Source: Styela clava (Eukaryota). Taken from it: a stretch of DNA of 64,000 nucleotides. Each line of letters starts with the position of its first letter. The stretch's first letter is position 1. Made by a program: the position numbers and the translations under genes. Positions 14,329 to 62,056 of the stretch are shown here, piece by piece. The notes beneath the pieces are model-generated. The model ran no database searches. It was not told the origin of the DNA and saw nothing but the letters and a program-made list of their open reading frames with translations. The stretch covers positions 11,160,001 through 11,224,000 of the forward strand of contig NC_135250.1 of the NCBI RefSeq assembly GCF_964204865.1, read 5' to 3'.

Positions 14329-14799
14329 GTCTAGCATAAAAACATCCAACAAATCCCCATCCCGCAGTCACAAAACCACAAACAGACATCCATGATAACC
14401 CACCGGAGACCAGAGGCACTCCCACAGACACTCATGACCAGAATCCAACCGAAAACCAACCACACTGTACCGGTACCAACCACATCACACCACAGCACAC
14501 GGTAACATGATTTCAAAGACAGATCGACAGTGTCACAGCGTCCTCAGTGTTGAAAATACAAAATACAGTAAGAATATGACATCATTTAACAGTTAAAACA
14601 AGGTTCGTCACAATATCATTTCAATATTGGATTCGGACTCGGAGTTCCGATAACTGACTCCGGGCCAACATTCTCCGGTTTTATTGCTGCAACGGGTTTG
14701 TGATTTTGGCAGCTAAATTTCGAGACTTGCAAGCGGTTTCTGCCTTCTGGGAGATCTTCGGCATTGTTTGTAATCTGTGAGCTGATAGGAAGGTCTAAG

Positions 14800-16825
14800 A
14801 TGGCGTCCAAGCTGGTAAGATTTTTCACCATACAACATATATGCTATTTACTGCAGTACCGGTACTAACCTGCTAACTGTTATCAGAATACTGTATTCTG
14901 GCGGTACCGGTAGCAGTATAGGTACAAAACTGAATCAAACTGCAAAACTGAAAAGAATACTTGTAATCTGTGCTTCCATATCATATCACAGTACCTTATC
15001 ACTGTATCGTGGGCACCTTTGCCGTACACAAACAAATGTTGTCAGTAAAACATCCAACAAGTTGACTATTAAACAACAATTCCTGAATTCACTAGACGAA
15101 TCCTCCGAATCACCAAATTCGGAGATTATAAATTCTAATTTGGGCGCACGTTCACTAAACGGCCGTAAGTACTTCTAATTGGCATTTAACAAACATTTTT
15201 ACATACGTTGATCCTAATCATGATTTGGGAATCCCACCATGGTTTTGCGGCAGCTCTAGGCGCCACAAAATAATTGAAACTGCACTTGCTAATTTGAGTA
15301 GTCTGGCGAGTGTATATTACGAGATTTTTTTTTTAGCAATCAAATGCCTTGTATCTGTGTAACATACGGTAGTGCAATAGTGTACAGTACGGTACCGGTA
15401 GCTATCATGACTGGTGATCTAAGCTTTTAATCTCATATCAAAAATGTTTCATCCACGTAGAAATGAATTTGGTGGCATCGTTTCGAACTATACTGTTAAT
15501 GCATTTTTGTTCAGACAACAGGGTTAGTGGGATTAGCCGTGGAAGCAAATGGCAAACAGAAATTAGCATTGCTTTACAAGAGAACACTTGAAATAGTGGG
15601 GAATATGCCACAAACTGCAGAATATCGGCAGAAAACAGAGGCTGTAACCAAGCACCGACAAACTATTCTCAACAAGGTAAATACTACTGCTATTTTTATC
15701 TTTCAAGCATTTGAGAGGTAAAATAATATGACTGGAAAAACTAGAACAGTAATTAGAGGTCAAAAATTTAGGAAATTAATTAATTTTTGTCTCATATCTT
15801 ATATCAGACTGATCCATATAATATATATTTAACTGAGAGGTGGCCACCTTTTTCGTCTTCAATATTTTAAATTCATCTACAACAATTTAAATGAGTTTGA
15901 ATTAATTTCCCTTTCAATCTTAATAATAGCTATGAGACCAACTGTATAGGTAACACAAGAATATGATAATTCCAAGCATTGTTGTGATTTTTGGTCTCAT
16001 GGCCACCCAAACACTATGAACTAATAATGGTGAAGTATGTAGGAATATTTCATTGCCAAATCTAGGCCCTTTGCAGCAAGAAACCAAGCAAACTTCTGTT
16101 ACTCTCACAAGATTCCACCAAACATTCAAAGTTGTGCATTGGTGATTAGTTCTGAATGCTAGTCATTACTCTTAATGTGTTATCAAAACAGCTTACCAGA
16201 AAATGGGCAAATCCGGCCAGTTGTGTAATTTTATCTGGCCCGTCTGATGCTGCCACAACCAAACTAAAACCAAATTTTGAAGTATACTAAAAATAGCTCA
16301 AGTTTGTTGAGATTGCGAATAAATTTAGTTTTGACATGTGGCCTATTGTTTTCCACTTTTGCTTTTCTAACACTGTAAATATTGTTCATAAAATGTAACT
16401 TTTCACACTTACATGGCCTGTGCAAAATTTTTCGCCCTGGTCCAGAAAACCTTGCCTATCCCTGCTCTTATAGCTCTCATTGACACAGTGAAAGACTCTT
16501 GATTTATATTTAATTTCGTCTAATCATTTTGTTGGAAATTAAAAAGACGAAGATCATGCACACTTGGGCAGGACTATCAGTTAAATTCCTTATCACAATA
16601 TCAACAGACTCTCATTTATCCATGATGTCTACATGCCATTTTCTCTCTATCATTTTACAGTACACAGATATGGCACTGGTAGAAGAGCATATTGGAAATG
16701 GACAAATTGAAGAACTCATAATTCAGGCCAAGAATGAACATCATCTTGCCAGGGAAATGGCAGAATGTCGACCATGGGAGACATTGGTTGGAGAAGCACC
16801 ACCTGGACAATGGGACTGGCCATGA
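14800..16825 (+). CDS. NDUFA5: NADH dehydrogenase (ubiquinone) 1 alpha subcomplex subunit 5
   Basis: Exons 14800-14814, 15515-15676 and 16661-16825 give MASKL-TTGLVGLAV...YRQKTE...GQIEELIIQAKNEHHLAREMAECRPWETLVGEAPPGQWDWP, the characteristic NDUFA5 sequence. Confidence 0.93.
16197..16464. mobile_element. Degenerate hAT-type MITE in NDUFA5 intron 2
   Basis: Decayed TIRs cagaaaatgggcaa/ttgcctatccctg with subterminal ccggcc/ggccc motifs. Confidence 0.45.
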
Positions 16826-16964
16826 ATATTTTTGAATATATTATAATTTATTTTTATTGTGTTCTTCTGATTACAACATCCACCTAATGAGCTGTGAGAA
16901 TATTTATTTCATGCACAAGGGATATGGGAATTAGGTTTAAGAAGATATTGCATAGTCCTATTTT

Positions 16965-18521
16965 CTAAACTGACCATAGTTCCATTACAGCATCATCAAA
17001 TCCACCAAACAATGTTTTTGGCGCTCTGTAATTCATAGGAGCGTCTACAATTTCCTTCTCGCAAAGTGTATCAAACATTTCTTCATAAGTATTTTCAAGC
17101 AAGTCTGTAATGTCCTGCTTTGGTCCCTTGTCAATGTTTTTTATCGCAGCGCTTACCGAAGATGAACAATGTTTCGAAAGAGCTGTCAATTCCCATAAAA
17201 AGCTTTCCATCGCTTTGCATTTTGCAGGATCAACTTCTGCTTCCAAGTATGGATCGCCAGCTAAAGCTTTCTTTTGTAAGGCTTTGGTATTTTGGTTTAT
17301 GAGAATTTTTATAGAAGGGTGTCTGTCAATTAAAGTCTGAATAAAATTTACCAATAATTCTTGCGCGCAGGTTGGTGCAACTAACGTCAATCGTGAAAGT
17401 CTTTTAGCAAATGCTGCAACCAAATATGCAGGCAAATGTGTTGATGACAGGAAAACATCCAAAAGAAAAAAAAATCTTGGCTGATATTTAGCATCAAATA
17501 CCCTTGGGTGAACCATGCTGTATAAATGAGTGTAAAAATCTGGATATTCCAGATTATGTTCATTCATTAGAATAAACAGGCTGTGTAAAGACAAGAGAGC
17601 TATACCACCTCCTTTGTTGAAAGAACGTGTAAGGAAATCAGCCAGGATACAAGGGCTTGCAAAATTTGGTATAACACATTTCTGAAGTATTACAAGAACA
17701 CTTTTGAAAAGATGACTATCCAAATCATAATTCAAAAACTCAAGCCAGGCATTTCCAAAGATTTTCCTTTGCTCTTTTAAATCTAACGCCTTAGGAAATG
17801 GAATTGACGAGTCCTGATACTTTTCAGTGACGACTGGATCTTTGTTGACCGCTGGAAAAATTCTTTCTACACCATTATTAGCCAAAGTATGTAAGTTAGT
17901 TTCATCCATGACAGCCGGCATGCTTTCAGATATTGAATTCAGTAAAGTGAATATATTTTGCAGCATCATAGACTTCAATTCTATTTTTGAAAGACATTCT
18001 GCTGAACATTTAGTAATACATTTGAGGGCAAAATATCTAACATCATCGAGTTTCCAAATATTCGTGCAAACATCTTGCATATGATTGGATGTATCATTTA
18101 TTATGAATGCACAGATCAGCGATTCTAACTCTGTTTCTGGAAAGCTAACATTGTCTTTTTGCAATGCGACCCCAATTTTACTTTCCATAAATCTTAAAAC
18201 AGTTACTATGCATTTTTCCTTTAAAATATCAGAATCGTGGTCCAGCAGGAGCACTATTTTTGCAAGGCATTCATTATAACGAATATTGATCCATTCTTGA
18301 TATTCCGACATTTCTTTAGATACTCCTTTTTGTTTGGTTAACTCATTGTTACATATAGCATTGCAAAAGTATGTGCCCACGCCATCCAAAATAACATTCA
18401 ACACTTCTTCATTTTCTTCAAAATTGATTAGCGGGATTAAATCCACAATCTTGTTACAATTTTGTCTGCTTTGTAATAACTCTTCAACCAAATTATTGAT
18501 TGATTTTAATGACATGGCCAT
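16965..18521 (-). CDS. NOC4L: Nucleolar complex protein 4 homolog (CBF/Mak21 domain), intronless CDS
   Basis: Single ORF with NLEYPDFYTHLY, FLSSTHLPAYLVAAFAKRLSRL and DPYLEAEVDPAKCKAMESFLWEL motifs. First ATG at 18521, with a tttcag acceptor at ~18550. Confidence 0.93.
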   Translation of the reverse strand: MAMSLKSINNLVEELLQSRQNCNKIVDLIPLINFEENEEVLNVILDGVGTYFCNAICNNELTKQKGVSKEMSEYQEWINIRYNECLAKIVLLLDHDSDILKEKCIVTVLRFMESKIGVALQKDNVSFPETELESLICAFIINDTSNHMQDVCTNIWKLDDVRYFALKCITKCSAECLSKIELKSMMLQNIFTLLNSISESMPAVMDETNLHTLANNGVERIFPAVNKDPVVTEKYQDSSIPFPKALDLKEQRKIFGNAWLEFLNYDLDSHLFKSVLVILQKCVIPNFASPCILADFLTRSFNKGGGIALLSLHSLFILMNEHNLEYPDFYTHLYSMVHPRVFDAKYQPRFFFLLDVFLSSTHLPAYLVAAFAKRLSRLTLVAPTCAQELLVNFIQTLIDRHPSIKILINQNTKALQKKALAGDPYLEAEVDPAKCKAMESFLWELTALSKHCSSSVSAAIKNIDKGPKQDITDLLENTYEEMFDTLCEKEIVDAPMNYRAPKTLFGGFDDAVMELWSV

Positions 18522-19268: not shown

Positions 19269-20579
19269 CTTTTAGGTGTGTGAACAGGTACCACTTCTTT
19301 TTGGCAAACCTGTTTTATATTCTGTGCGCTTTCAACCTTGATTAATATTTTATCTGCTCTTCTGATTCTACATACAGTTTTTATTCGTTTTTTTTCCCCA
19401 CTTTATCGTCTGGTATGCTGATTAGGAGTCAAAATACATATGTGTGGACTTTGAAGGATGGTTGTAGTCAACTTTTTTTGTATTCATCCTAGGAAGAGGG
19501 AAAACCACTGCGGTTTGAATACTTCAAGCATTTGCGGGATCACCAGATTATAAAATCAACCAATCGATCAATTGTATTTTGGTCGCAACTAAAATAAAAT
19601 AACAGCAAAAACAAAATAACGACACATACACACATTTCCCTATATCTGATTGATAAACAATCGCGTTGGTGTTTACCTGATGCACAAATCAAGACGACAC
19701 GGTGATTCTACTAGGAACAATTGAGAAGACGTCAAATATATAAATTATAAAGAATAGGATTTTCATATATATATATCTCCGAGGGGAGTCGATGAGACTA
19801 GTCGGTAAATTCATAATGCCAGATGAAAGCCGTAGCCGGTCATTAATCTCGTGAACCTCCATGCTAGGAATTCAAAAAAATGCAATAATTGCAGGTTTTT
19901 AAAGTAACCATCACCCTTGGTTAGCTTTCCTGGTAGAAAAATCACTTTTTATTTAGACCTTGTGACGGATTTGGAATATCTTATCTCCTATTATGCTAAG
20001 AACTAAATTTTATTTTAATATTGCTGTGGGCTATTATTTTGCTCTCTAGCAAAATACGGTAAACTTTAGTATGTCTACGAGGAAAAAATAAACTCATACA
20101 TCGATCTTGGATGCTCAGACAAATTTCCTAGTTTCATGTGCTTGACTTGCGCTTTGTGCTATGGAAGCAATGAAGTCTCTAAAGTAGCCTACCAATTGAA
20201 TCTTATAAACATGGATTCAAAGCTCGCACACATTCTGTGTCGTATACAGCTCATTAAACAATATAAGCACGTTAGGGCACCAAGCAAAGAGTGGCACCAC
20301 AGAAATTTTAATAGTAGAATTTTATATAGTTTTTCGGTGTTTATTTAAAATATTACGAGTTCACCATACGACAAAAAACATCAAAATGTTCGCTTATTTT
20401 TCGTCTTCAAGTATCATATTAATATATTATCCTTATTTATCAGTAATAAACAATGAAACTTATTTATTGGACACGAAAGAAGCCTATGAGTCGTTTAGTA
20501 AAATTGTCGTTGTTTTTTCTTGTGCCTTTATTTTTTTAGTAAAAACACTCCTCTGTTTTCAAGCGTGGGCCATGTCATA

Positions 20580-22438
20580 TAGTAGGGCGGGGGAAGATAG
20601 ACACACGGGGTTAGATGGACACTTTTTTTCAAATTGACCTATTGGCGACATCTTATGGGGCTTGGTTCTGCAAATGCCATTGCCGAGTTCGTTGCTAAGG
20701 AGGGAATTCGTTCTAGCCATTTCGGTTCAGCGCTTGGCGTAGTTCGTCAGTTGTGTAGCTTTCCACGTGGCTTGTGATTTTTGAAGGGTGAAAAAAGGGC
20801 ATTTAGTAAGGATACGTTTTTCTTGGAGGCACTATATGCTCATTTTCAGCGAAGGAACTCTGAATCGCGCATTTGTTGGTAAGTTTATACTTACTGACAA
20901 TGATTAAGGACTAACTGAGCGACTTGTGCCATCTAGCAGCTAACTATATCTTTCAGCATGTGATCATGTAAAATGGGGGGGGTTATGAGGGGGTAATAAA
21001 TTTCTTGCGTTTTTCGGGCTTATATTTACTTTGACCGTTCAAACCCGTTCTTTGTGAATAAGATTCCAGAAAGTCTTCTTTTTAATTTTGTTATTGCTTT
21101 TACCTGTCAAAACACTTCTTGGATAATCTCAATAATCTTATGAAATTATGGGGGGTGGCCATCTTACCCTTATGTACTATCACGTTTTTCCAGATGCAAG
21201 TTTTGGATGCACGGGAAACAGAAAATCCTAAAGAATGTTGAGAAAATACCAAAGAATATCAAACAGAGGCAAATAACAAATAGAGACTAAGATGTACCAC
21301 CTCATGAGGTTAACACCACGACAGAGGTAGAAAGTGTCACAAGTGAACCATGCTGCTCTGTGCTCTCTAACGATTTTTTCAAGTAGAACTTCACCAGGAG
21401 TTCAGTTAGTTTCTGATAAAGTCAGTGATTCTTTGGGGCAAGAAAATAGCAGAGAAATGATAGCACCAGTTTATCATTTGAATATATTTGCCTCTTCCAG
21501 TAGCCACTCAGAGAGCCAAGAGGCAAAGAAAGCCATTCAGGCAGGAATTAGAGTGTTAACAAGTGAGAAATATGTAGCCGAACTGTCAGCACTCGCAGAA
21601 ACAACGCCACCTAGCTCGTTCAGGAAAACTACAGCACTCGCAGAAACGATGTCATCTAGCTCGTCTAAGAAAGTTGCAGCTCCCAGGAAGAAAAAAGAAA
21701 ATAAACGTAAGAATGAGCGACATGAAAGATATTGTTACAGTAACCTCTGTGCTGTCTGCAACGGCAATTTTTTTGACGACGAAGAGGACGAGGGATGGAT
21801 TCAGTGCCAGAAATGCCAAAAGTGGCTTCACAATATTTGTGCCGGGATTTATAGAAAACACATTGTGTTCTTCCAATGTGATGACTGCTCTGCTTGAAGC
21901 TTTTTTGTATAAATATTTTCATTCGAATGTAAAATTCCATGACGATAGCTTTCATGCTATCCCAGATGTTCTTTTGGTGTTATGATTAAGATTTGTGTGA
22001 AAGTATGATCAAATAAAATTTGGCTGCTTTACTAGGTGGTGTTTTATCATACTTTCGTGAACAATTATATGGGTTCACAACTTCAAAAATTTAAGGGGTA
22101 AGATGGACATAGGGGGAATTTTCGAATACCCCAAAAAATTTTCCAAATACATTGCTTATTTTGATATTCTGATAAGAAACAGAACGCAATACTAGTATTT
22201 TGATGCGATTTTATCACATGTCCGTCATATCCGACCATATGTCCAACTTCCCCGAATTTTTTTTTCGTTAAAAAACGTTTCTGCTGTTGCGATGGTTGGA
22301 GACCGGCGGACGCCGCCGAGTGGCTAAAGAGTTCAGCCCCTTATGTTTGTACTTGCAAAGTTTTAGGAATATTTGAAGAAAGGTTTTCGAAATATAGATA
22401 ATTTTCAATAAGGGGGGCCATCATCCCCCGCCCTACTA
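20580..22438 (+). mobile_element. Internally deleted pogo/Tc1-mariner-like DNA transposon
   Basis: 15-bp TIR tagtagggcggggga/tcccccgccctacta, flanked by TA on both sides. Carries a transposase-C-terminus-like ORF. Confidence 0.82.
21334..21897 (+). pseudogene. Remnant C-terminus of a pogo-like transposase with Lys-rich stretch and PHD finger
   Basis: C4HC3 pattern CAVC...WIQCQKCQKWLHNICAG...CDDC, preceded by RVLTSEKYVAEL and a KKK-rich segment. Lies inside the TIRs. No DDE domain is visible. Confidence 0.7.
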
Positions 22439-24187
22439 TAGTAGTGGCGAAACGCAGAGCCGACTCAACGCCGCGCAATTCAGTTTTTTTCAGCAAGGTC
22501 CCGAAATACCAACTTAGACGGACTTGGTGGTTATTTGACGATGGCAAATGACGACTTGGCGAAGTTTTCTATAACAATTCGTAATAAAATGATTGTCACA
22601 AGAAAAGTGGCATAAGGAAAACACGGTGGAAACGTATTTACTTGACCATCACGCAGTGTCTGGTTTGATTTCAAGTAATATCTGTCACGAAAGAATATAA
22701 TTTGAAGCAACATTAAACGCGAGATGCGAAAAATACAACGGTAATTCTCGGGAATTAATTTTAAAATACCTGAGAGCTTTAAATATTTATCATATTTAAA
22801 AGAACGCCACCCATGCAACATAATAGCAGTCTGATTAGAACGGTAAACTCTCGTTGTTTATCAAATTTGAAGTAAGTAAACTCGCGATATTTCGATCACT
22901 CTTGGGTTTTCTCCGACTTGCGGCCCGCGAGACTTCGTCAAAAGTTTTTGCAGTTCTTCAACTTCGAACCACCCTATGGTAGACTACTAGTACCGGTAAA
23001 ATTTCAAACTACAGTTGTGACTTGTATCCTTTGGTATTCCGAATCGCGTTGAGACTGGAGACATGAATCTTTATTAGCCAACCTACATGCGACCGCGATC
23101 AACAGAAATCGTCAAAATAGTTCGCGATCGACTAATCGGTAATAAGGTCACACACAAAAACAAACGAGTTCGAATATGCAAATAATTGCACACATACATA
23201 CAAAAACTTCCGCCACTGTCAATAGGCTCGATTCTTTGGACTCATTCTTAATGAAATCGCCATAAAATTTTGTATTTCTTATGTCCCATTTAATTTAATA
23301 GTTTGGTTATGCCATCGCGTACACAGTACTGTATTATTCCGGTTTTAAATGCGCACAACATGCGCTGCATGAAACTGGTTCAAGACAATATTTTGAGGTA
23401 CTTATTAAATTCTCAGACGTGGCGATCGACGTGTTGGCCACCCCTGTCGTATATCATCGAACTAAAATATTACGCTAATGTAAATTGCATTGCTGGTCAC
23501 TTCATCAAAACTGAAAACAAAAGCTATTCTGAATGAGCAATACCTAATGGACGACTTCGGCGCTCCTTACGAACATCAGTACATAGACATCATTGCCCAA
23601 TGGCCAATGCCCTCCCTTTTCGCCACATATTTACATTAAGACAGGTTCGGTTAAAGACCTTTTAAATTCAGATATTCAGCAAATTAATACTGGGCGCTAT
23701 GTAACGACTCCCATCAATATGTAAAATTGCACAAAAAAAATGGAACACACAACAAGTTCCGAAGCACTGATGAACACCATTCGCTAGGTCTATTCACACA
23801 AGTGCTGACCACTGATTCTGAAGCTGATAGCAAATACCAAATGTGAATGGCCCTAATTCGATAATAAAATCGAGATCAGAGAATTTATTGATCAGAATAC
23901 ATTTAATCAATATCAATTTAGTAAAATCAATATAAACAGATTTAAACAGATGAAAAAAACTTATAATAATAATTTATACTCTCGAACTGGTTCCATAAAC
24001 TCCATCTCGTTTGAATGAATTTGCTTCAGTTTCCGTTGAGCTATTAAGAGATTTTTTGTATGAATTTTTGTTAACTACATATATTTTAGAGTGCAATAAA
24101 AATAAAACACTAATTTTTACTTCGTTATGTTTTACTACTAAGCTATTGAAAGGATGGTGTAGGGGTTTGCAGTTAATCGAAATACCC

Positions 24188-27100
24188 TCATGGACAAAAC
24201 AACTCAATAAAAAAAGGTCTCCTGATCATAATTAACATGCCACCAATGAGAAGCACCCCATAGAATATGTTTTTAACAACAATAAACTAATAGAAAATAT
24301 ATCATACCATTGTGAGGTGGAAGGAACGCTCTTAATTTGCTTTGAAGCATCTCGACAAATTTGATTCAACAGTGTCTTGACAGCTATGATTGATGCATTC
24401 TAAAAATATGTCAAATTATAGAGAATTCAAACTGCTCAAACTTTCTCCAGTGAGGTAACAAAAACCAAATAGTTTAACGTTACTTTCTACTATATCCAAG
24501 GATAGGATTTTTGCATTAAACTTAATAGAAAACAAGATGAAAAATACAGATTCAAACAATAAGGCAAACCCACGGCCTCTCATGTGGGGATCTGACAAAG
24601 AAGCTATGTAGCTTTTGGCCTAGTTTATCTCTGTCCTTCCTAGGTCATTTTGGGTTGTAAAGTAGTTGAAGTATTAGACTGAACTATGATTGCACTACAG
24701 CTAGGATTGGGTATTCTAAAATACCATTTAATTTCAGAATCCACTAGAGTAGTTTTTTCGACTCCAATCTCGAATACCACAAAAATACATAAATTATTGA
24801 AAACATAGAATCCATCACTCATCAATTCACTGAGTTGACACATATGAGTTGACATAAATTAAGAAACATGTTTCACTAACATCTCACCGGGAATACAATA
24901 TTCACAGGTCAGAATTACATTGTAAAAAATAAGTCTCCAATAATGAGGAATTCATCTCAACCATAGGTGGACAAAATGGCGACATGATATAATTTCTTCC
25001 ATATCAGTGGCTTATTGTGTGCAGTACCATGTTTGAAGCAAAAAGCTTATAAATACATCACATAAATAAATATCAGTTCACTATAACACAACATCATAGT
25101 ACACAAATGGACATTATGGACTTTCCAAATAGACTGCAACTAGAGTCGAAATATGTTTACTTATTCAATAGCAATCATAGTATCTACCTCTGGTTCTGTT
25201 GGATTGAACTTTGTTACTTGATCGAAGAAAGGATGATGAATTGAAACATGCAGTGAAGCACATTTATCTTCATCACAAAGGAATTGTACCAACTGTAAAA
25301 AAGATATTGACATTCAAAGAAACATGTATAGCGCTTCCTGCACTAGTAAGTAAAACTACAATAGGATAGAATAAGATTTTTCAAATTTATCACAAAGGAG
25401 TGAAAAGTCAATGAGACAGCTTAATCATATGGCGAACCACGACCGCCCGTCCAGTCACCAGGCCGTGTTGGGTATTAGATTATTTAACCAGTTATTTGTT
25501 TCAGATGCATGGACTTGATGGAGGAAGGCGTTACCAACCAGTGGGTACGCGAAACACCCTTCAATTGAGAGTGCAGCAACCCTCTCACATGTAATTATAC
25601 CCCACATTAGTCGAACCTGCGAACCCACTCTGAGTAACCAGAGGTGGGATAGCGAGCATATTCCTAACGCTTATATAAAATGATCATATACTATAATATC
25701 TATCCAATATTGAATATCTAATTTTTTTTAAATATGTCATTCCATGGTTAGTAAGGGAACAACGAAAATGACAATTTTTAAGAACTAACCTGCACTATTT
25801 CAGGTCTACACTTTGTTTTCAAATGTTCAAAATGAATATCTTTCAGTTTCTCTTTCTGCTTTGTTTTCGTCTGTTTCTTTGAGGGATCAAGTTGAGCATT
25901 TGATGCATAATTCACAGGAAATCCAGTAGCCATCTCAAATACAATTTGGCCTACATCGAAATTAAATTTTCAGAGACATTTAGAAATTTCATGAACAAAG
26001 AGATAAATTATACATAGACATTCGATATCGTGGATGTTTATGGTAGTACGAAAATATCTTTTCTTTGGCTTGGCGGTGTGGTATTTTGTGCTAAGCGTTA
26101 GGAATACACTCGCCATCCCACCTCTGATTAGGCCCGAATCATGTGGGAATAATTATGTAAGAATAAATTGCTGACTCCTCGCCGCTGTAGGGTGGTTCAC
26201 GTAACAGCTGGTAAGTTATGGCTTTCGCAACTAGCAAGTCCATGCATCTGAAAACAAATACCGGTAACTGGCTAACTAATCCCATACCCAGCATGGACTG
26301 ATATCAGGACGAAAGGCCGTGGTTCGCCAAATAATTAGGCAGTCTTATCCTCCCTCATGGGATAAATATGCATATCCTATCCTAATTTGAGCAGTATAAT
26401 GATTTATTCGAAGTTTTGTCGTCGAGTTAATCACAACACTGAACTTAGTTACCAATGCTTCATCTTACCAACTGCATTGAGTGTTGCCCGATCATCATTC
26501 GATTCCTGAATGTACTTCGTTCTCATTTGTACAAGTTCGATTTCATAGCCAGATAATTTACAAACTCCTTGATCGATAAATACATTCCGAGCATGTAACC
26601 AATGATGAGTCTAGTTAAAACAAGACCTATCATCAGAATTTATTGTATTCAATCAAGGATTGCCAAAATTAACCACATTTTGAAATAGTATTGGTAAATA
26701 TGGAGTATCGAAAATATTTTAAATTGGGCCATTTTCAAAAAAGAACAAATACAAGGTGACCCAATGAAGGGAACTCATAAATACCAATCACTTTTTATTT
26801 AATTTTCATCATTCAATAAATAAAGAACGTTAGGTCATACTGTCAAACTGTTCAAATTGATAATTCCTCTCCCAAAACATTCTAGTTTATTTATAAAATC
26901 AATAATTTGAAATACAGAATATATTTAATTTCGAATCAATGTGATAATTTTATTAGTATTTCAACATCCCTAACAAAAAAAGACAGTGTAAACATACCAC
27001 CTTTTTCATTGGGAAACGAAGTTTATCCAAAAATATTAATCCGAGTAATATTTGCTTCGTATAAACGCATATCTTCTCCAGTGAAAAAGGTTTTCCAAAA

Positions 27101-30100: not shown

Positions 30101-33100
30101 ACAATAGGAGAAATATTTACAAAAATCGTCAAGATATTTTGTGAGTGATAATGTTTCTCAACCCAAATATAAGTGTGTGACTCAACAAGTATAAGTATAA
30201 AAAAACACAAAGTGACTGAAGCTTAATAACATACATCTGCTCAAATACTGCAAACACAATTTTTTTAAAATAAAATTGGTGCATTCACCAACATTTACAT
30301 TCAAAATGAAATAGCAGAACGTTTAAGGTAGGGGTGGGCAACCTTTTTCGGCTCGCGTGCCAAAATCGGCTACACGTGCCGACCAAAATTGAAAACAATG
30401 CTTTTCAACTTTCAAAGAAAAAATATACAATATTAAACCTTTTAAACATGTAGAGACAGATTCACTATTCTGGGAAAGTTTCGCCCAACAAATAGATTTG
30501 ATTATTTTCTTATTCTATATCAGTAAGACTTCTGCTGCTGTATTAGCCTGATAGTTACATTGGGTTTATATTTAGTAAGGAAATACATGAATTACTGGTT
30601 TCATCTTTCAGGCCACTCCTGTTATACTAGACTTGATGAATTTCATAACTGAGAACAGAGGTACACAAACAATATGTAAATGAAAACATGGAGAGTAATG
30701 CAGTTGCAAAGTTTTTAAGACACGCACACCAAATTTTCAGCAATGGCATCCCAATTACGCAATAGTTCGTTTTCTGCACTTCTCTCTTGTATTCCCTTCC
30801 CTAATCGCTTATATTTCTTTCAAAATCAATTTATAGCAGTAAGTTAGCAAGTACCGGTAACTCTAACCAACATGAGCTATACAACTTATTAAATCAAGCA
30901 GAAATGAGGAATAGGGTGGCACAGACGAACTATATTGCGCAATGTAGCCAAATAAATGCAGTACTCTTCTCGACAAAATTTATCGTGAGCTCACTCATTT
31001 GTTATTTCATAATATATTTCTTTGTAGCCATATGCTACTAAGGACTACTAAATAAATAACGAATTGTTAACAAACGATAATAAATAAACGAACGCCTAGT
31101 TTCATCAGATAATTCAGAGTCTTGAACTTTTTATCTAAGGGAGAATGATCTCGTTTCCGGGGCCTCCTCACTCGCGTGCCGAATAAATGGGCTCGCATGC
31201 CAAAGCCAGGGGTTGCCCACCCCTGGTTTGAGGTATTCAACAAACAGAGATGGAGTCCATGCCACTGGAACTTATTGTTTGTTCTATAGTCATTGTGATC
31301 AATTATGCTGAAAAGTTTATAGAATACAATTTTTTTGGTAAAATCAATCAAATTGGTTGAAAGTTAGGTAATTCTGATTGCATTCACTTTGTACTGAAAA
31401 GTAATTTTAAATATTAATATTATTTACTCTTAAGATAGAAATATCACCAAATCAAATTACCTATTTGTTTGTAAGATTGTATAAACTCTAATTTACTCAA
31501 ATGTCGCAAGTAATATTGACAGCTCATCAATGCATGATCATATCCTGTTAAAATAAGGTTGTATGAATAAATTTCTGTTTGCAGTTGAAATATTTAAAAT
31601 CAATGTATAATTAAATATAAGAAAACGATTGATCTTTCAATGTCTAACGTCAGAAAAAATCAAATATTGAATGCATATATAGGAAAATAAGAACTAAGTA
31701 ATAATTAGGAAAGGCAATATTAGTTTTAAAAGTCACCTAGATTTTGATTACAAAACATTTACTCAGGTTGTTTGGAACATATTCAGAAAAAACATAACTT
31801 CTGTGCAAAGCATCATAGATTACTGGAACTTTTGGGTACAATCAACGCAAACAGATGTTCAGGTGATCAATCAATTTTCTGCATTTCTGTACAAATAATC
31901 AAGAAATCAATAGATTTCATATTTTTTTTCCGGGTCACCCTGTACGTATTGTCACAATTCACACGAAAGCAAACGACATATCAATAAATTGTTCAAAAAT
32001 GGAAACAAAACTTTATTCAAATTTCTGTCAGATAATAAATCACCTTGATGGGAAGTGGAAAAGTCGGTTCCTTGTTGATGCAACAGCAACGAATTTTCAT
32101 CAAGTATTAATGTGTATTCAGATTTTTTTCTGAAATGAAAAAAAAACAAAGAGTAGAAACAGTGGATGAAGATTTGATAATGAATAACTCTCATGTTTAA
32201 CTAATTTTGATCACTTGATTTAATTGTTCCATTTAGCAGCTTATAATATGTGTCAAGTAGTAATGACCTTATTTTGGAATATAAATAAGTAAGGTGTGAC
32301 ATTGTTAGCATGAGCACTATCTGGTTATTTTCAAACACTTATCCATACATATGCCATTGGTAGCTTCCACTGCTTGGTCATAGTTAGGTTTGGTTCAGCA
32401 TTTTCTAACCAATTCATTACCCCTGGGTAAGGGATTTGAACCAGAGATTTTAACAAACCACAAGGATTTACAAGTCTCAATGATGAAACCTATAAATTTT
32501 CATATGCTTTTTACACAATATGCTAGTTTGTGCATTTGGAAAAATGCAGCCGAACACCAACAAGATATACCTTAGTTCTCCTCAAGTATAAAAATGTATG
32601 GTTGATAATCGAATAGAAATAGTGTCTAAAAATAGTATATACCTTTTAGGTGCGGCAAGCATGACTGCATTAATTAGTACTATCTACTTCAATTGATTAA
32701 TTAATGCATAGTATTATCCCTGCGTTATTATTGAATATTGATTGACCTGAAGCAAGCTGTATTATACCTATAAATATGAGAACTCACCTGAACATGCATA
32801 AAATCACTATATATAGAAGTTGAAATAAAACAAGGGCTGAGATTCCTATAAACACCTAAAATAAAATATTTTTTTGATTCTGTTAAGACTAATTTCAGGC
32901 AATTACCAGAAAAGAGTTAAAAAAATTTTACCAGACTAAATCTGAGATGTTAAAATCGATGTTATTAAAAACAACCGAAGATATATCAGGAATGTTTGAT
33001 AGCAAATTCCATGGAGCCCACTAATGAATATACTGTGTGCAAATCCCAAAGTACCAAATAAAGCTGCCATGCAAGCTTGTAGAAAACACTAATTTCATTC

Positions 33101-38557: not shown

Positions 38558-40028
38558 TTTATAAGATACTTCTGAAAAAAAAATAACAAGCATAGGATAT
38601 AGTTACAATTACAAGCATATAAATGAAAATCATTAATAACTCATTTAAAACTAATAATACCAACAGGAGATAATTTTAAACAAATATGGATATGGGATCC
38701 TTGATTCAAGCCCATTTATAAATCACTATCCATTTAGAGTGGAAAAATAAAGTCTAACAAGACATTTCAAAATCCACTTTTCTAAAGCTTAACAAGACCT
38801 GGTGGTATCAAATCAAAACTCTATATCCCAAACATATATCATTATAATTAACTTAGTTGTGAAATCAATTACTAATGTATTAGAAAATTGAACAATACCG
38901 GTAAATGATTTCAGTCAAAACTTGGGCACAAATGAATAAATACAAATATTGTGCCATTTTGGATGTGTTTTGCACGTGCTTTATCAATGAGAAATTAGTG
39001 CCTTTTTAAAGTATATAGATTAATTACGGAAAAATAAATTGCCGCCACACACAAAATATAGTTTTGTTCAACCACAAGTTATCTATATAATAAGAGTTGT
39101 CAATGACAGCAAGTTTCAAATTAATTATATTCGAGGTACAAACATAAGAGTGCGACTCGTTAGAAAATTATCGCTTAGGTGTTCAAATGTTAAACTTACA
39201 CTTAAAAATTTATGTATTTGACAAAAACACGCAGACAAAAAAAATTACAAAATAATCCACCAAGCACTGCAGAAAAGTATAGTCACATTTATTATTAATA
39301 CACCACAATAACCAATGATCCTACACCGACATCGTTTTGCTACAAGGTTTTACAAATGGCCTTCTATTAGGTAATAAGGTTGGTTGAACAGGGAACCCAA
39401 CTTTGTGTTAACCTAGTTGAAAATACACTGCTCCGACTATGAGATGTGGATGAAGACATCTAGCAAATCATTGTCAGATTTCATCATGCTCAACAAAGAC
39501 CATTACTGGCATAAAACAATAATTTTTTAGTAAATTTAGTTATAGATCATTATTTAAGTACCTTATTTAAAGAGATTTCAATTATATCAATTGCAGCTCG
39601 TTAAGGCAGTTTATCATAAATTAGATACTCGGTTGGAAAGTGGCATAAAGTTACATACAGACAATAATGACACAAGGCAAAAATATATATATATTCGCAA
39701 CTATAGTATGAACTAGTATATGAAATAATAAAATCAGCTTTATTCCCATGTGTTGAATTTGTAGTTTCAACAAACGAGAAAAATTACAAGAAATTACTGT
39801 TTCATATAATAGATGAGGAAAGAAGATGAATTAATGGTACAATGGAAATGATATATATTCACAGTAAATTATACATCTAAAAGTACCAAATGAAAGAGAC
39901 TTTATATTTGTTCTCACACCATAAATGTTGCAAACATACTGCGGATAACAATAACAATCAAAGTTAGAGAAAAATCACAACAACAGACCTATGATAACAA
40001 CATGTATCACAGAACAACGGAGAGAATT

Positions 40029-41093: not shown

Positions 41094-42015
41094 TGGTGTA
41101 TTAATTAACTAAGTCATTATAATACTGCATAATATATAGATATTCATTTTTAAAAGGATTCAAATAGTTCCATAATCAGTTTTTATTCGCATGATTTTTA
41201 TCTATCATTTTATCGCTTGCTTACTACAGTACTATGCTCACTATGGAGTCGCAATAAAATTTCTCATTATTGTAATTTAAATTGTGGATTCAGCTTATAG
41301 GATACTTGTAGCAGAATTTATTTGTTTGCCAAACCAGAAATCTAAGTTATACCGTACAGTTACCGGTATATCAGTATATGTATATTATAGTATATACCGG
41401 GCCTACATACAAAACATAAAGAATTTAAGTTTTTGATAAATGCAGAAATGATTGGTTAGTAACCATAGGGTCGTTGAGTGAGACAATTGAAGCATGTTAC
41501 CAATGCTGCAATGAAACACAAGTCTACAAGGGTTACAAGTAGACTACATAAATAAAAACAGAAATACTTTTACAGTTTCAATATTCTGATATTAATCAAC
41601 TCTCAACATCTCGCCTTAACTTGTGAACCATGCCCAAATGCAGTACGCTTTCGGTCTTTAATAATTTTGTACCATGAGCAATTTTTCCGCACGACCAACC
41701 GAAATACTGCGATTGCTAGTACCAGTAGTCAGATATCAGGATATTGCGTGTTTGAAAAGCTGACTCGCAGCTGTTTTATTTGCGATACCAGTACCTAATC
41801 TATACTGGTAGTAGTAGATACCTTTTTTGGTAATGAACAATTGATTACGGTATCCTATAACAAAGTGTTTCTAGGGACATTGGACCCATAACCAGAAAAC
41901 GGTACGGAGTAGTACGTTACCCTATTCACAAAAACATAACTAATGCACGAATAAAACCAGACCACAACAAAAGAAAATTGTCGAATATTGCGAAAAACTT
42001 TTGCAAGAATGACCT

Positions 42016-45185: not shown

Positions 45186-45303
45186 CTTCCTTAAAGCGAG
45201 AAGGAATGTAGAAAAGTTTGAACGACATTCTGAATCCTGTAGTTTCACAGGAGAATTTAATATAATTGAAACTAATATATATTGAAAGTTTTTCTTAATT
45301 AAT

Positions 45304-45352
45304 GGCGCGGCGGTGTGGCTCAACGGGCTAAGCGTTAGGAATACGCTCGCCA
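45304..45352 (+). mobile_element. Isolated 5' head (A-box) of the tRNA-derived SINE
   Basis: gcgcggcggtgtggctcaacgggctaagcgttaggaatacgctcgccac is identical to the head of the 53466 copy. Confidence 0.85.
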
Positions 45353-46878
45353 CTCTGCGTGACTTATCGTTGACTTATTACTGATTAGCCATTGTTACAG
45401 AAATGAACAGAGAAATCGAGACACGAGGAAACATCAATTGTTATCTCATTGCTGATTGGCCATTGTTGCGAAAATGAACAACAAAATGGATATTTACGAT
45501 TGAAGTAACATCACAGAGATGTTTATTCCCAGTTCAGTAAAGAACTATAATGTAACAAATCTGTATTCGTTTTGTCATTTGTGTATACTTATTTATCGTT
45601 ATTCATTTATTATTATTTTATTTATTCTTTAAATATTGAATAATATAACTAGGCTAGATTGTGATTGTGGAACCATAAAAGTAAGAAAATCGTATATACC
45701 GTAAGTCTGTAAGTTAAGTACCAGTACATGTAGGAATAAGGAATAACTAAGAGTGTTTCCATTTTCCATCGTTTGCGAGAATGAGGTTATTAGAACTCTT
45801 CTCTCTTAGAAAAATTCTGAAATTAGAGAATCAGTTCCTTTTTTAACAATTAGGAAAGTTGAGACACAACTTAGGTTTAGGCTAGTTAGATTACTAAAGA
45901 ATTTGGAATAACTTAGTCGAGGCTAATAATACTGTAATATGCAATACTGCAATACAGTAGCCTATGAATTTGCATATATTTTCTTGTGATGTTCAGATGT
46001 TTGTTTTGCTGTTAATACTGTAATAAATAAAAAATGTTAATTTCTGTTATAAATAAAAATGGTGAAATCTGTGTGGAAAATACAACAATGGATTCGGACT
46101 ATTCGATAATACTGGATCAGCCAGTCAATGAAACAAATTGACAAACTGAAATTGTGATTAATAAACATATAGACTATATAGCTGTATTTTTTTTAAATAA
46201 ATTTTCTGTCTCTATATCATTATTGATTTTTTTATTAACTTTTTATTTAATGATAACTATTGGATGATCCACATTGTACAGGTGTACAACCTTTTCAAAA
46301 CGATTTGGATATGGCAGTAATAACGTTACTGTATAAAATGGAGGGAAAACTATTATTACAGTATTAGTTCATTATTTATGGGTATAATATTTTTCCAAAA
46401 TATCAGCAAATTGACCCGGGTTCAGTCGAATCCAGTCAGGCTCGTAGGAAATAATTCTGTGCGAGACGATTGCCGGGCAAAGTTTCAGGACCACCTCCAT
46501 AAGTATACTGGATAATAATAATCAAAAATTGATTTGTGATGGCCATGTGCAGCATAAAGAGTTTGATCGGTATCTTTGCCATATATAATGTAACAATGTG
46601 GTAAAATTGCCAAGAAAAGACAAAACATTAAAAAATGATATAGGATAACGTAAATGATGCCCAAAATTGAGATTTAATTCATGCACTTGCTTAAAAAGTA
46701 AGCCTGAAGCTGATGCTTTCTTCTTTCTACATGGAGGTATAATATACAAGCAAGGTTAATGAATTCGGATCATTCTTATAATTCATATATAATAATTACT
46801 TATTACAATTTTTAATGTTGTTTCATTGACTATACAGTTCAATAAATATTCATAGATTATTGACTGAAAACTCAAAAA

Positions 46879-49275: not shown

Positions 49276-49623
49276 ACTGAGTCTGACATTGAAATGACTA
49301 TCTCTAATTTCAAAATCACTGAAAGCTCCATGAGCATAAAGAATAATGATAACAAGTGTATCGCTCTAATCTGATGAATGATCAAGGAAAATGATGGGAA
49401 AAATCACAAACCATATTGAGAATGACTGCTCACAATGCAAGTTAAAATAATTACCATATACATACTAACAAATTTCAAGTATGCATCTCATTGTGTATTC
49501 AAGCATGTTCGGCATGATTCAATTTTAATCATATTTTATGTACTTATACATCTTTAACGATATATATTTTGAAACATTTATGTATTTTGAACCCTTCTTT
49601 TCTCCTCAAATAGCAGAAATTGG

Positions 49624-49813
49624 GGTACCCCTCGAATATGTGAACCAAGATGGACACCGGAACATAGTATGTGTACTGGGTTAGGCTATAATTTACGAGT
49701 TTGGTGACTAGTCAAGTGACTCCGTTGTCTTTGTACCTGAAATTATGGCCTAACCTGGTACATGTAATATGTTTCGTTGTTAGCCATCTTGGTTCACATA
49801 CGTCGGGAGTACC
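49624..49813. mobile_element. Merlin-like MITE downstream of the VPS35 stop codon
   Basis: ggtaccc...gaaccaagatgg / ccatcttggttcac...ggagtacc, with perfect 8-bp TSD gaaattgg. Confidence 0.85.
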
Positions 49814-59975: not shown

Positions 59976-60119
59976 GTGTAAGCCATATGAGTCAGCTTTT
60001 CAAATCTCATACTTTAGCAAAACAATAAATAATTCAGTTCATTACAATAAGTATCCAGTTTGTGAATGTATGTGTTGTTGTCAAGCAGTAAAATACTTAA
60101 AATTATAAAAACACTGTCA

Positions 60120-60867
60120 ATGCCTGAAAGATTCCCCACAGAAGATTTGCTTTTCTAAGGCATGTTTTCAGTCTTCAGGGTCTTTTTCAAAACATTGGGT
60201 AAGTAAAGGGTGTAAAATGGCTTTGCTTAAAGTTAAAATAACATAAAAAATATCCAATCTATTTGCACTGCCACAGATAAGTATAACGCTGTGAAACCAT
60301 TCAGATAAACATGTAATAGTCGCAGTGCAGTTTTCCATTGACATTGAAGCATATCCTGTTTACAGATGTCGCTGTAGAGCCATCTAATATGTCATAATCA
60401 TTGTGGCATCTCACAGTTTATTTCGAATTTCATGTTGTTTTTACTCTGTATAATTGACTTTAATGTAAATGTCTAATATCCCATAGTTATCATGGCATCC
60501 TGTATTTTATTTTGGAACTTTGTTGTTCTTTTTTGTATGATGAGTCTAATTAAGTGAATGTTCGGGTAATATTCCATAGCCGTTGTGGCATTTGCAGTTA
60601 ATTTGGTATTCTTTTTGTTGTCATTTTGTTTTTATATACGATTGTGTCGAATTTAGTAAATGTTTAATATTGAGTTGTTCGGTTGCTATATTTGCTGCTT
60701 CAATGCAGCCACAAGGTGTCGTTGACCGGATGACTTTTTGAGTCTTTCGCGACCCCTCGTCTACTGCAACAAGCCGATTACTTTTTTTATAATTTGTTAT
60801 GTACTTTTTATGTATTTCATATCGTACATTGGTTTTGCATAACGAAAATAAATATCTGAATCTGAAT
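60120..60867 (+). mobile_element. Possible decayed non-LTR retrotransposon (CR1/L2-like) 3' fragment
   Basis: KIPHRR-like RT remnant at ~60128, ending in aataaa followed by a (ctgaat)2 tail. Confidence 0.35.
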
Positions 60868-62056
60868 GGGCAAGGCGAGGTGTCATTGGTTCGCGATGAC
60901 CTGAGTACTGGTCTGGAGTAGTAATTGGTTTAGTGATGAAAAGAAACCGTGACAAGTAGGCTACATATATTTTCATATCACATGTTGCTTCGATCTTTAA
61001 GGTGGTTGGATATTTGGGTCTAGTTAATTTATTACCATAAACCTTTATTAAAATAACACCAAATAAAAATGTGATGTGAAAATAGCCGAAGCTGCTTAAA
61101 TAACGCCAAACAGAAATGTGATGTGACGTTTATATGTTTTTTTAAAATATCTCTATGCCGCGGAATGAAATTCTTAACAGACCCATTTAGTTAAAATAAA
61201 GTCCACTCAATTTTCAACTAAGCAGGTATATTCCATGCCAAACAGGGTATAGCAACTTTTATTTGAAAAAATAATGAAGTTTGTTCGGTGTTATGTTATT
61301 TAAGCAGCAATAGCATTTATTTTCACATCCGAATTTTGTTTGACGTTTTTAGGCATTTGCTGCGTGTACCTCGTTCTGTCGTTAGACTCAAAAATTTGTA
61401 AATAAAGTACCGTTGTTTGCTTTCATCTTACATGACTGTGATCTTCAGTCTTGTATTTTATAATTTGATATCTCCGATCTGCTACCTAAAGTCTCTATTT
61501 GAAGTGAATAATATAAAATAATCTTCTGAAGGTTGGCATCAATATTTTAATACCATACCGGTAACGCATAAAATTAGTAACTAAATGTAGTAGTCTACTG
61601 ACTGTAGTAAAAAAATAACTGACAAGCAATGTCTAAAAATTATTCAGTAATTGAACTACTTTCAGACTTTAGAAGCGATTAATTAATACAGTACGGTACC
61701 GGTAATAACAATTAATTGTAAATTTTATGCTAAACTTCAACACGATAATGGTTATCAGACTATCCAGCAGTTCTCATACTGCTGCACTGAGATATCACGA
61801 CTGTGTAGACTGCAGTAAAATTTCAACCGTGTTAGTGTATACCGGTACCGTAGGTACCCTACTGACAGACTGTCTGTACGAGCACTTTTCGCCACCAGTC
61901 TAAGGTATTTTCAAACAACTGATACGAAATTCACTAGTTCAATAAAGAACTACCAGTACAAATAATCAAAACACGCAGCTAAACAATCAACTGGAGAAAT
62001 AACGCTAACCTTAACGAAATACAGGTGCATGGGAAAATATATTCAAGCCTGTCCAT

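What the first reader, a model, noticed from the sequence alone, without database searches (positions are those of the whole stretch)
14468..61856. TA-flanked micro-motifs behave like stacked DNA-transposon excision footprints marking gene 5' ends
Seen: TACCGGTA occurs at least 13 times (4505, 14468, 14857, 14905, 15393, 22991, 26259, 30852, 38896, 41361, 61556, 61697, 61840). A rough composition estimate at ~33% GC predicts fewer than one. Related TA-CCG/CGG-TA, TA-CAG/CTG-TA, TA-CCAG-TA and TA-GGC/GCC-TA are also common. They cluster around the NDUFA5 start and first intron, upstream of FBXO8 (41226-41850), in the VPS35 5' region (45690-46020) and in the DNAJB first intron (61550-61960). Known: Tc1/mariner/pogo elements insert at TA, duplicate it, and leave a few terminal bases on excision, for example the TACAGTA/TACTGTA footprint. 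Inference: repeated insertion and excision in open germline chromatin has left a scar record that marks promoters and generates new CpG-containing palindromes.
Basis: partly seen in the sequence, partly recalled or inferred. Interest (0 to 1): 0.8.

Follow-up and report, generated by a model that had tools for sequence, protein, structure and literature searches.

The report
Transposon excision scars, source element found
The oddly common word TACCGGTA in this sea squirt genome is very probably the scar left when a TA-targeting cut-and-paste transposon with CCG...CGG ends jumps out again, and about 30,000 such scars record past jumps.

Summary
TACCGGTA occurs 13 times in the window against 0.33 expected, and 30,656 times in the 377-Mb genome. 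The control words ATCCGGAT and ATGGCCAT occur 2,702 and 4,861 times.

The excision-scar reading holds.
- Two window sites (26259, 30852) lie in dispersed repeats whose other copies have a plain TA there, so TA became TA-CCGG-TA.
- At that same TA of the SINE, 739 copies are unchanged. Sixteen carry an insert, 13 of them TA-X-TA (X = CCGG, CGG, CTG and others).
It is a 1.46-kb non-autonomous element with TA flanks, perfect 27-bp inverted ends and termini CCG...CGG. About 164 ends and up to 348 places were found, and copies are 95-98% alike.
- Twenty-three of those ends directly abut a CCG, CGG or CCGG scar, where about 0.5 is expected.

Several points remain open. The transposase that moves the element was not found, although at least 126 pogo-type genes are present. 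Enrichment at gene 5' ends is only suggestive in this window. Polymorphism could not be tested.

The mechanism is textbook Tc1/mariner/pogo biology. The scale, the stacking and the identified source element are new for this genome. Other first-reader notes of this scan flagged similar scars elsewhere in this genome.

The parts
4505..4512 (.). TACCGGTA scar candidate
   Evidence: flanks unrelated to the other sites
14468..14475 (.). TACCGGTA, 332 bp upstream of the NDUFA5 start codon (14800)
14857..14864 (.). TACCGGTA in NDUFA5 intron 1
14905..14912 (.). TACCGGTA in NDUFA5 intron 1
15383..15400 (.). Stack TA-CAG-TA-CGG-TA-CCGG-TA (18-mer). It includes the TACCGGTA at 15393. TACGGTA at 15365 lies 18 bp upstream.
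   Evidence: the same 18-mer occurs 23 times in the genome with unrelated flanks, control 0
22991..22998 (.). TACCGGTA scar candidate
26259..26266 (.). Proven insertion: TA became TA-CCGG-TA inside a tRNA-derived SINE copy (about 26135-26385)
   Evidence: 28 other copies read AAACAAATAACTGGC; 739 genomic copies are unchanged at this TA.
30852..30859 (.). Proven insertion: GCAAGTAACT became GCAAGTACCGGTAACT inside a dispersed repeat copy (at least 30700-31000)
   Evidence: the five closest copies (L002-L005, L028) lack the 6 bp. One search agrees.
38896..38903 (.). TACCGGTA scar candidate
41225..41852 (.). Cluster upstream of the FBXO8-like ORF (start 41108, minus strand): TACAGTA 41225, TACCGTA 41350, TACCGGTA 41361, TACCAGTA 41720 and 41786, TACTGGTA 41803, TACGGTA 41846
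45650..46022 (.). Mixed cluster about 0.9-1.2 kb upstream of the VPS35 start codon (near 46879): X = GGC, CCG, CCAG, GGC, CTG, CAG, GCC, CTG
61556..61563 (.). TACCGGTA, about 3.4 kb upstream of the DNAJB start codon
61687..61704 (.). Second copy of the 18-mer stack TACAGTACGGTACCGGTA
61840..61852 (.). Stack TACCGGTACCGTA (CCGG followed by CCG, sharing a TA)
20578..22440 (.). TA-flanked 1.86-kb non-autonomous element. Its inverted ends (TAGTAGGGCGGGGG...) resemble those of an intact pogo-type element (L064). It shows that TA-targeting elements reside in the window. It is not the CCG family.

Best explanation
The TA-flanked micro-motifs are excision scars of cut-and-paste transposons that insert at TA (Tc1/mariner/pogo type).

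Shown:
- TACCGGTA and TACGGTA arise as 6-bp and 5-bp insertions at a pre-existing TA.
- The genome holds a young family of 1.46-kb non-autonomous elements, flanked by TA, whose inverted ends begin CCG and end CGG (5'-CCGTAAAAGCGCCTAACTTCGGACA...).
- Resident copies of that family sit directly beside CCG, CGG or CCGG scars about 50 times more often than chance allows.

Inferred from the known chemistry of this superfamily: the transposase cuts the non-transferred strand about 3 nt inside the element, so the donor keeps TA-CCG-3' and 3'-GCC-AT overhangs. If these pair through the 2-bp CG overlap and the gap is filled, the product is TACCGGTA. If all three bases pair with a central C:C mismatch, the product is TACCGTA or TACGGTA. 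A 4-nt or 2-nt cut would also yield TACCGGTA.

Each scar creates two new TAs, and insertion seems to favour TAs next to CGG or CCG. Scars therefore stack into chains such as TACAGTACGGTACCGGTA and short (CCGGTA)n runs. Rarer X values recur (CTG/CAG, GTC/GAC, TCG/CGA, AGC/GCT, GCC/GGC) and are probably scars of other TA-targeting families. TCG/CGA fits a mariner found here with TA|CGAGGTG ends. The scars themselves need have no function.
For: Insertions at TA:
- two window sites are 6-bp insertions at a TA relative to 5 and 28 other repeat copies.
- all five private 5-6 bp insertions seen in repeat alignments, each with at least 5 copies lacking it, are TA-X-TA (CCGG twice, CGG, AGC, AGG).
- at one SINE TA, 739 copies are unchanged and 16 carry inserts. 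Thirteen are TA-X-TA: CTG x3, CAG, CGG x2, CCGG x2, the stack CGG-TA-CCG, CCGC, GTC, TCG, GCC.
- at a second SINE TA there are 12 inserts, including CGG x2 and the stack CCG-TA-CG. No other non-duplication insert recurs.

The source element:
- L061:2009-3470 has perfect 27-bp inverted ends, TA flanks and CCG...CGG termini. Further copies lie in L069, L088 and L090.
- the pattern TA-NNN-TAAAAGCGCCTAACTTCGG has 79+85 hits against 0 for the control. NNN is CCG in 99 of the 100 listed, and hits come in +/- pairs about 1,440 bp apart.
- 348 candidate places; all 40 scored are near full length at 95-98% identity.

Association of element and scars:
- 45 ends have a TA 3-4 nt further out, with X = CGG x10, CCGG x8, CCG x5. 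I estimate about 0.5 expected by chance.
- 3 of the 21 other loci that hold the 18-mer stack (63 kb in all) contain this family, against about 0.06 expected.
- the one quasi-random locus that holds the element has the highest scar density of 59 (14 in 3.25 kb, median 0).

Background:
- at least 126 pogo-type DDE_1 matches, many with long open frames.
- (PMC6943129): Tc1/mariner scars are the first or last 2-4 nt of the element flanked by TA; for Sleeping Beauty, TACAGTA or TACTGTA.
Against: - No autonomous partner or transposase was tied to the CCG element. It has no ORF over 71 aa, and none of the listed pogo hits lies beside a listed terminus.
- No locus was found with the element in one allele or copy and the scar in another, so the link between this family and the scars rests on matching termini and adjacency.
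- The copy number (up to 348) is small next to roughly 30,000 TACCGGTA. Either many excisions per copy or further families with the same ends must be assumed.
- No 6-bp indel polymorphism was seen at 14468, 14857, 14905 or 15393, though those data could hardly have shown one.
- TACCGTA/TACGGTA is no commoner than its reversed word genome-wide.
- The cut position (2, 3 or 4 nt) is not determined.
Confidence: 0.85

Rival explanations
1. TACCGGTA is a selected binding site for a transcription factor or a core-promoter palindrome, comparable in form to the fly DRE TATCGATA or to the ACCGGT core of CP2/Grainyhead-type sites. On this reading it is common because it is used at many promoters.
For: The word is a perfect 8-bp palindrome with a sharply defined length. 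Several clusters lie near gene 5' ends.
Against: Sites arise as 6-bp insertions inside SINE and other repeat copies. They stack head to tail and sit beside transposon ends. Many lie in introns and repeats far from gene starts. A matching transposon terminus explains every letter. Secondary use of some scars as binding sites is not excluded.
Confidence: 0.03
2. The motif comes from a repair or slippage process unrelated to transposons. One version is a nuclease that cuts at TA, followed by fill-in and short added nucleotides. Another is growth of a (CCGGTA)n microsatellite.
For: About a tenth of sites are tandem at 6-bp spacing. The X values at a given TA vary, as untemplated additions would.
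Against: Slippage cannot create CCGG next to a TA where none existed. Untemplated addition would not give one 4-mer a tenfold or greater excess over ATCCGGAT, or threefold over TAGGCCTA. It would also not match the first and last three bases of a resident TA-flanked element, or abut that element's ends.
Confidence: 0.06
3. The scars are real transposon scars, but most were left by other families with CCG...CGG ends, extinct or undetected (for example short MITEs). The 1.46-kb family then merely shares the transposase or the target preference.
For: There are only up to 348 copies against roughly 30,000-50,000 scars. Old copies at 82-88% identity (L088, L090) show the lineage is older than the young burst. 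I could sample only about 340 kb of the genome.
Against: TIR scans of about 340 kb found no other TA-flanked element with CCG ends, apart from one single-copy 501-bp inverted repeat. The adjacency statistics are specific to this family.
Confidence: 0.25

Closest known systems
Canonical excision footprints of Sleeping Beauty and other Tc1/mariner elements (PMC6943129)
   Same: The target TA is duplicated and encloses the first or last 2-4 nt of the element. For Sleeping Beauty this is TACAGTA or TACTGTA, from 3-nt 3' overhangs joined by end-joining. Here TAC[C/G]GTA is the exact analogue for CCG...CGG ends.
   Different: The commonest product here is the 8-mer TACCGGTA, which I explain by the 2-bp CG overlap that CCG/CGG ends allow and CAG/CTG ends do not. 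The scars are seen as a genome-wide fossil record rather than in an assay.
pogo-superfamily elements such as Passer (PMC9976928), and pogo-type transposases in this genome
   Same: They target TA and have terminal inverted repeats with subterminal repeated motifs. Passer leaves footprints of 0-4 bp. This genome has at least 126 DDE_1 matches. The CCG element's repeated motif TAACTTCGGACA resembles TAATTCGGACA in the inverted end of an intact pogo-type element.
   Different: No transposase is encoded by the CCG element, and no pogo copy was found between such ends. Assignment to pogo rather than Tc1 or mariner is therefore a weak inference.
Genome-wide excision surveys of Mariner/Stowaway elements in rice and other grasses (PMC4423477, PMC5023962)
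   Same: Excisions were recognised by comparing filled, empty and scarred sites. DNA transposons insert preferentially near genes, and excision repair is a source of mutation.
   Different: In rice, 94 excisions were catalogued and most carried deletions or filler DNA; only 8 were perfect. Here one clean scar type is abundant enough to rank among the most over-represented 8-mers, and scars stack into arrays.
Minos 6-bp footprint
   Same: TA plus four terminal nucleotides of the element, a net 6-bp insertion, as for TA to TACCGGTA.
   Different: A 4-nt cut would require CCGG as the first four bases. The element begins CCGT, so a pure 4-nt model fits less well than the 3-nt model with a CG overlap.

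Membership tests
Transposon excision footprint (Tc1/mariner/pogo type) | The site is an insertion relative to an ancestral empty site | tested here: met
   Window 26259 and 30852 compared with 28 and 5 other copies. 739 copies are unchanged against 16 modified at one SINE TA. A second TA gives 12 modified copies.
Transposon excision footprint (Tc1/mariner/pogo type) | The target TA is duplicated around the extra bases | tested here: met
   In every proven case TA became TA-X-TA.
Transposon excision footprint (Tc1/mariner/pogo type) | The extra bases equal the terminal 2-4 nt of an element present in the same genome | tested here: met
   The element's ends read CCG...CGG in 99 of 100 listed termini. 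The scars are CCG, CGG and CCGG.
Transposon excision footprint (Tc1/mariner/pogo type) | The same locus is seen filled (element present) and scarred in different alleles or copies | not tested
   No such locus lay in the DNA I could fetch. An earlier unverified note (s1-819895) claims one in a tandem array elsewhere in this genome.
Transposon excision footprint (Tc1/mariner/pogo type) | Presence/absence polymorphism of scars within the species | tested here: inconclusive
   One search lists no 6-bp indel at four sites, but the contigs laid were near-identical to the assembly and the raw-read run barely covered the unique parts.
Tc1/mariner/pogo superfamily element (the 1.46-kb CCG element) | TA target-site duplication | tested here: met
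   TA precedes all 100 listed termini with 0 mismatches and both ends in L061. That it is a duplication follows from the scars, not from an empty site of this element.
Tc1/mariner/pogo superfamily element (the 1.46-kb CCG element) | Terminal inverted repeats with repeated subterminal motifs | tested here: met
   The 27-bp ends are perfect, and the motif CCTAACTTCGGACA is repeated near both ends.
Tc1/mariner/pogo superfamily element (the 1.46-kb CCG element) | DDE/D transposase of the superfamily, encoded or supplied in trans | tested here: inconclusive
   The element has no ORF over 71 aa. The genome has at least 126 pogo DDE_1 matches, 3 mariner and 2 weak Tc1-type matches, but none was linked to these ends.
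Selected promoter or transcription-factor motif | Sites arise and persist by substitution and are position-constrained relative to the start of transcription | tested here: not met
   Sites arise by insertion inside repeats. Positions range from 332 bp upstream of a start codon to introns and SINEs. Conservation across species was not testable.

The most novel reading that the evidence does not exclude
Scars may act as landing pads. The element would prefer TAs flanked by CGG or CCG, which mimic its own end-flank junction, so each excision raises the chance of another insertion at the same spot. pogo-type transposases in this genome that carry chromatin-reading modules could steer this to active gene 5' ends: a PHD-like finger seen here, and a Tudor-like module noted by another reader. 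The result would be self-growing arrays of CpG palindromes that record germline-accessible chromatin and may be taken up as regulatory sequence.
Probability: 0.2. Interest if true: 0.75.

Novelty: new member of a known kind. Interest (0 to 1): 0.5.

Why it matters
1. It explains one of the most over-represented 8-mers of a chordate genome by a mutational process. Anyone doing motif discovery at tunicate promoters should know this before calling TACCGGTA a regulatory element.
2. Clean scars in tens of thousands give a rare record of transient insertions, that is, of where a DNA transposon landed and left. Resident copies cannot give this record, because selection and excision remove them. With an annotation and chromatin maps, this makes germline target choice and excision rates measurable.
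3. In repeat alignments every private 5-6 bp insertion was of this type. Excision repair may therefore be a main source of short insertions and of new CpG and TA sites here.
4. The 95-98% identical, perfectly terminated copies suggest a family that moved recently and could be developed as a native genetic tool for ascidians.

Tried and rejected
1. I tested whether TACCGGTA is part of a longer dispersed repeat. The flanks are unrelated, so no.
2. A 501-bp structure in L058/L061 with TA flanks and perfect ends beginning CCGG looked like the source MITE, but it is single-copy.
3. The Tc1 (PF13358) and mariner (PF01359) searches gave only 2 weak and 3 hits. Their ends are TAGTAGG... and CAAGGTG/CGAGGTG, not CCG.
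4. I considered CpG decay as the source of the TACAGTA/TACTGTA excess. Decay of TAC[C/G]GTA should give as much TACCATA/TATGGTA, which is not enriched (14 vs 10.9). Decay therefore explains little of it, though old element copies do show CCG decayed to CTG or CCA. It may still explain TACCAGTA/TACTGGTA.
I fetched no further loci. Later genome searches only counted patterns or read up to 9 variable letters at defined sites.
6. Reads: much of the first 2.6 kb of the chosen stretch (12001-14600) shows very high depth, as repeats do. Contigs of two runs matched the assembly almost exactly in the unique parts, and the Hi-C raw reads gave almost no depth there. No statement on polymorphism is possible.
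7. Large insertions in repeat copies and general TA-flanked TIR scans revealed hAT-type MITEs with 8-bp duplications but no further element with CCG ends.
8. Literature searches for the word itself returned only primers and barcodes. I found no paper on such scars in tunicates.
Full report
**Observation**

One hundred dinucleotide-preserving shuffles give a mean of 0.33 and at most 3. The window has about 35% G+C, with a CpG observed/expected ratio of 0.84 and TpA of 0.81. Against a first-order model the word ranks second among all 8-mers (13 vs 0.4). ACCGGTA leads the 7-mers. Thirteen of the 72 CCGG in the window carry TA on both sides.

The related words are enriched more mildly: TACAGTA/TACTGTA 25 vs 8.7, TACCGTA/TACGGTA 13 vs 4.0, TACCAGTA/TACTGGTA 9 vs 1.6, TAGCCTA/TAGGCTA 15 vs 4.6. 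The 30 bases on either side of the 13 sites are unrelated to each other, so this is not one dispersed repeat.

Earlier notes of this scan call the organism a sea squirt. In the whole assembly (377 Mb, window at C1:11,160,001-11,224,000) the word occurs 30,656 times. The control words are much rarer:

| Word | Genome count |
|---|---|
| TACCGGTA | 30,656 |
| ATGGCCAT (reversed) | 4,861 |
| ATCCGGAT (flanks swapped) | 2,702 |
| TAGGCCTA | 9,691 |

TACCGTA plus TACGGTA total 52,224. That is about twice a first-order expectation scaled from a 254-kb sample, but no more than the reversed word. Sites are strongly clustered: among the first 100 genomic sites, 14 gaps are under 100 bp against 0.7 expected, and 19 are under 300 bp against 2.2 expected.

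**Origin by insertion at TA**

Two earlier notes on this window (s1-817596, s1-817615) claimed that sites 30852 and 26259 are insertions inside repeat copies. I tested both.

- **Site 30852.** The stretch belongs to a dispersed repeat. Its five closest copies read GCAAGTAACT where the window reads GCAAGTACCGGTAACT.
- **Site 26259.** The stretch is a tRNA-derived SINE. Twenty-eight other copies read AAACAAATAACTGGC and the window reads AAACAAATACCGGTAACTGGC. One further copy has TACGGTA at the same TA.

I then ran an all-against-all comparison of the roughly 340 kb I held. Every private 5-6 bp insertion that at least five other copies lacked had the form TA-X-TA, with X = CCGG twice, CGG, AGC and AGG.

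Next I asked the whole genome about that one SINE TA. 739 copies are unchanged and 16 carry 1-9 extra bases plus a second TA. Three of the 16 are simple tandem duplications. The other 13 have X = CTG x3, CAG, CGG x2, CCGG x2, CGG-TA-CCG (a stack), CCGC, GTC, TCG and GCC.

A second TA nine bases away gave 12 modified copies. These include CGG twice and the stack CCG-TA-CG, and no other non-duplication insert recurs. The word is therefore created by a process that duplicates a TA and places a few defined bases between the two copies.

**The source element**

Scans for TA-CCG...CGG-TA pairs with inverted ends first found a 501-bp structure that proved to be single-copy. A rescan of all loci found, right beside it, a 1,458-bp element at L061:2009-3470. 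It has perfect 27-bp inverted ends reading 5'-CCGTAAAAGCGCCTAACTTCGGACA, TA on both sides, and repeats of CCTAACTTCGGACA near both ends. It has no open frame over 71 aa, so it cannot move by itself.

Genome-wide counts show a young family:

- The pattern TA-NNN-TAAAAGCGCCTAACTTCGG has 79+85 matches against none for the control.
- NNN is CCG in 99 of the 100 listed.
- Matches come in plus/minus pairs about 1,440 bp apart.
- A DNA search gave 348 candidate places. All 40 scored are near full length at 95-98% identity.

Older copies at 88% and 82% identity (L088, L090) have termini decayed to CTG and CCA.

**Link between element and scars**

Three results tie this family to the scars.

1. Of the roughly 164 termini, 45 have another TA 3-4 nt further out. 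There X = CGG x10, CCGG x8 and CCG x5, plus TGG x2, CAG, CTG, CAGG and scattered others. From the genomic frequencies of these words and of TA I estimate about 0.5 such neighbours by chance. That estimate is my own arithmetic.
2. The 18-mer stack TACAGTACGGTACCGGTA occurs twice in the window and 23 times in the genome, with unrelated flanks and a control count of 0. Of the 21 loci outside the window (63 kb), three contain a copy of this family, where 348 places in 377 Mb predict 0.06.
3. Among 59 quasi-random stretches, the only one that holds the element has by far the most CCG-type scars: 14 in 3.25 kb against a median of 0.

**Mechanism**

[quoted passage not shown] This leaves 3' overhangs, and end-joining gives scars equal to the first or last 2-4 nt flanked by TA. 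For Sleeping Beauty these are TACAGTA or TACTGTA (PMC6943129). A pogo-family element leaves 0-4 bp (PMC9976928).

With CCG...CGG ends and a 3-nt cut, full pairing with a central mismatch gives TACCGTA or TACGGTA. Pairing through the perfect CG overlap, followed by fill-in, gives TACCGGTA. This step is inference; a 2-nt or 4-nt cut cannot be excluded.

Each scar adds a TA. The bases beside unbiased TACCGGTA sites favour CGG on the left and CCG on the right. Both facts, together with local re-insertion, would produce the observed stacking.

The rarer recurrent X values probably come from other TA-targeting families. TCG/CGA fits a mariner found here with ends TA|CGAGGTG. The genome holds at least 126 pogo-type DDE_1 matches, many with long open frames. 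One intact 565-aa example has TA flanks and ends TAGTAGGTCGG, and a 1.86-kb relative of it lies in the window at 20578-22440.

CpG decay does not explain the TACAGTA excess, because the sister product TACCATA is not enriched. It may explain TACCAGTA/TACTGGTA.

**Position relative to genes**

I verified the following gene features:

- the NDUFA5 start codon at 14800 and two later exons;
- a 535-aa ORF at 18572-16968 on the minus strand;
- an FBXO8-like ORF at 41108-40032 on the minus strand;
- VPS35 from about 46879;
- the first coding exon of DNAJB near 58166 on the minus strand.

Ten of the 26 CCG-type sites lie within 1 kb of these five start codons, which cover 16% of the window. Those ten sites form only three clusters. 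The 5' bias is therefore suggestive only. DNA transposons inserting near genes is known from grasses (PMC5023962).

**What could not be done**

- Reads laid on 12001-18000 showed no 6-bp indel at four sites, but were uninformative.
- The transposase that moves the CCG element remains unknown.

**Comparison and novelty**

The kind of event is textbook. Genome-wide excision catalogues exist for rice, where clean scars were rare: 8 of 94 (PMC4423477). I found no paper describing such scars in tunicates, or as a leading over-represented word of a genome.

Other first readers of this scan flagged similar TA-anchored micro-insertions elsewhere in this genome. Those notes are unchecked and do not count as support. 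I file the finding as a new member of a known kind. The mechanism is known, while the source family, the scale and the stacking are newly documented.

Noticed in passing
L064:775-2472 (minus strand); element L064:116-3098: An intact 565-aa pogo-type transposase (HTH_psq, Tc5/CENP-B HTH, DDE_1 at 3e-22) ends in a Cys4-His-Cys3 PHD-like finger. The finger scores 19.6 bits, below Pfam's cut-off. A second match with the same 570-aa open frame is listed at C14:7646063. A chromatin-reading transposase could bias insertion towards active promoters.
   Followed up: partly
G000:C6:21824814-21839924: Six pogo-type DDE_1 matches with identical scores and 403-aa open frames lie exactly 2,937 bp apart. This is a tandem array of a transposase-bearing unit.
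   Followed up: no
L061:1473-3493 (= G000:C6, about 7452673-7454693): Nested inverted structure. A single-copy 501-bp palindromic unit with TA|CCGG ends and 146-bp arms lies next to the 1.46-kb element. Both are enclosed by an inverted copy of the flank ATACAGTAATATCTGAATA. The region is dense with scars and may be a product of aberrant transposition or break repair.
   Followed up: partly
L008, L014, L017 at about 250-1020; window 10530-10770: hAT-type MITEs with 8-bp target duplications, for example a 771-bp element with ends CAGGGATGGCGAACC...GGTTCGCCATCCCTG. They contain GCGAACC and CGCGGG-type strings, so such elements probably account for the window's other over-represented GC-rich words (GCGAACC, CGCGGGCC, CGGCCCGC).
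   Followed up: partly
window 58100-58175 and about 57450 (minus strand): DNAJB coding exon 1 ([22 protein letters not shown]) and the exon holding the HPDK motif lie here. The 61.5-62.0 kb scar cluster is therefore upstream of the coding region, not shown to be an intron.
   Followed up: partly
window 12001-18000, run X6: A Hi-C raw-read run labelled with the same species gives depth only on repeats and almost none on unique sequence at 90% likeness, despite about 5x nominal coverage. The sample may be divergent or the label may be wrong.
   Followed up: no
G000:C3:12122936-12124409; also C13:7648935-7650407: Some element copies carry a scar on both sides, for example TACGGTA[element]TACCGTA. 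This looks like insertion into the central TA of a pre-existing two-scar stack such as the TACGGTACCGTA seen at a SINE site.
   Followed up: no
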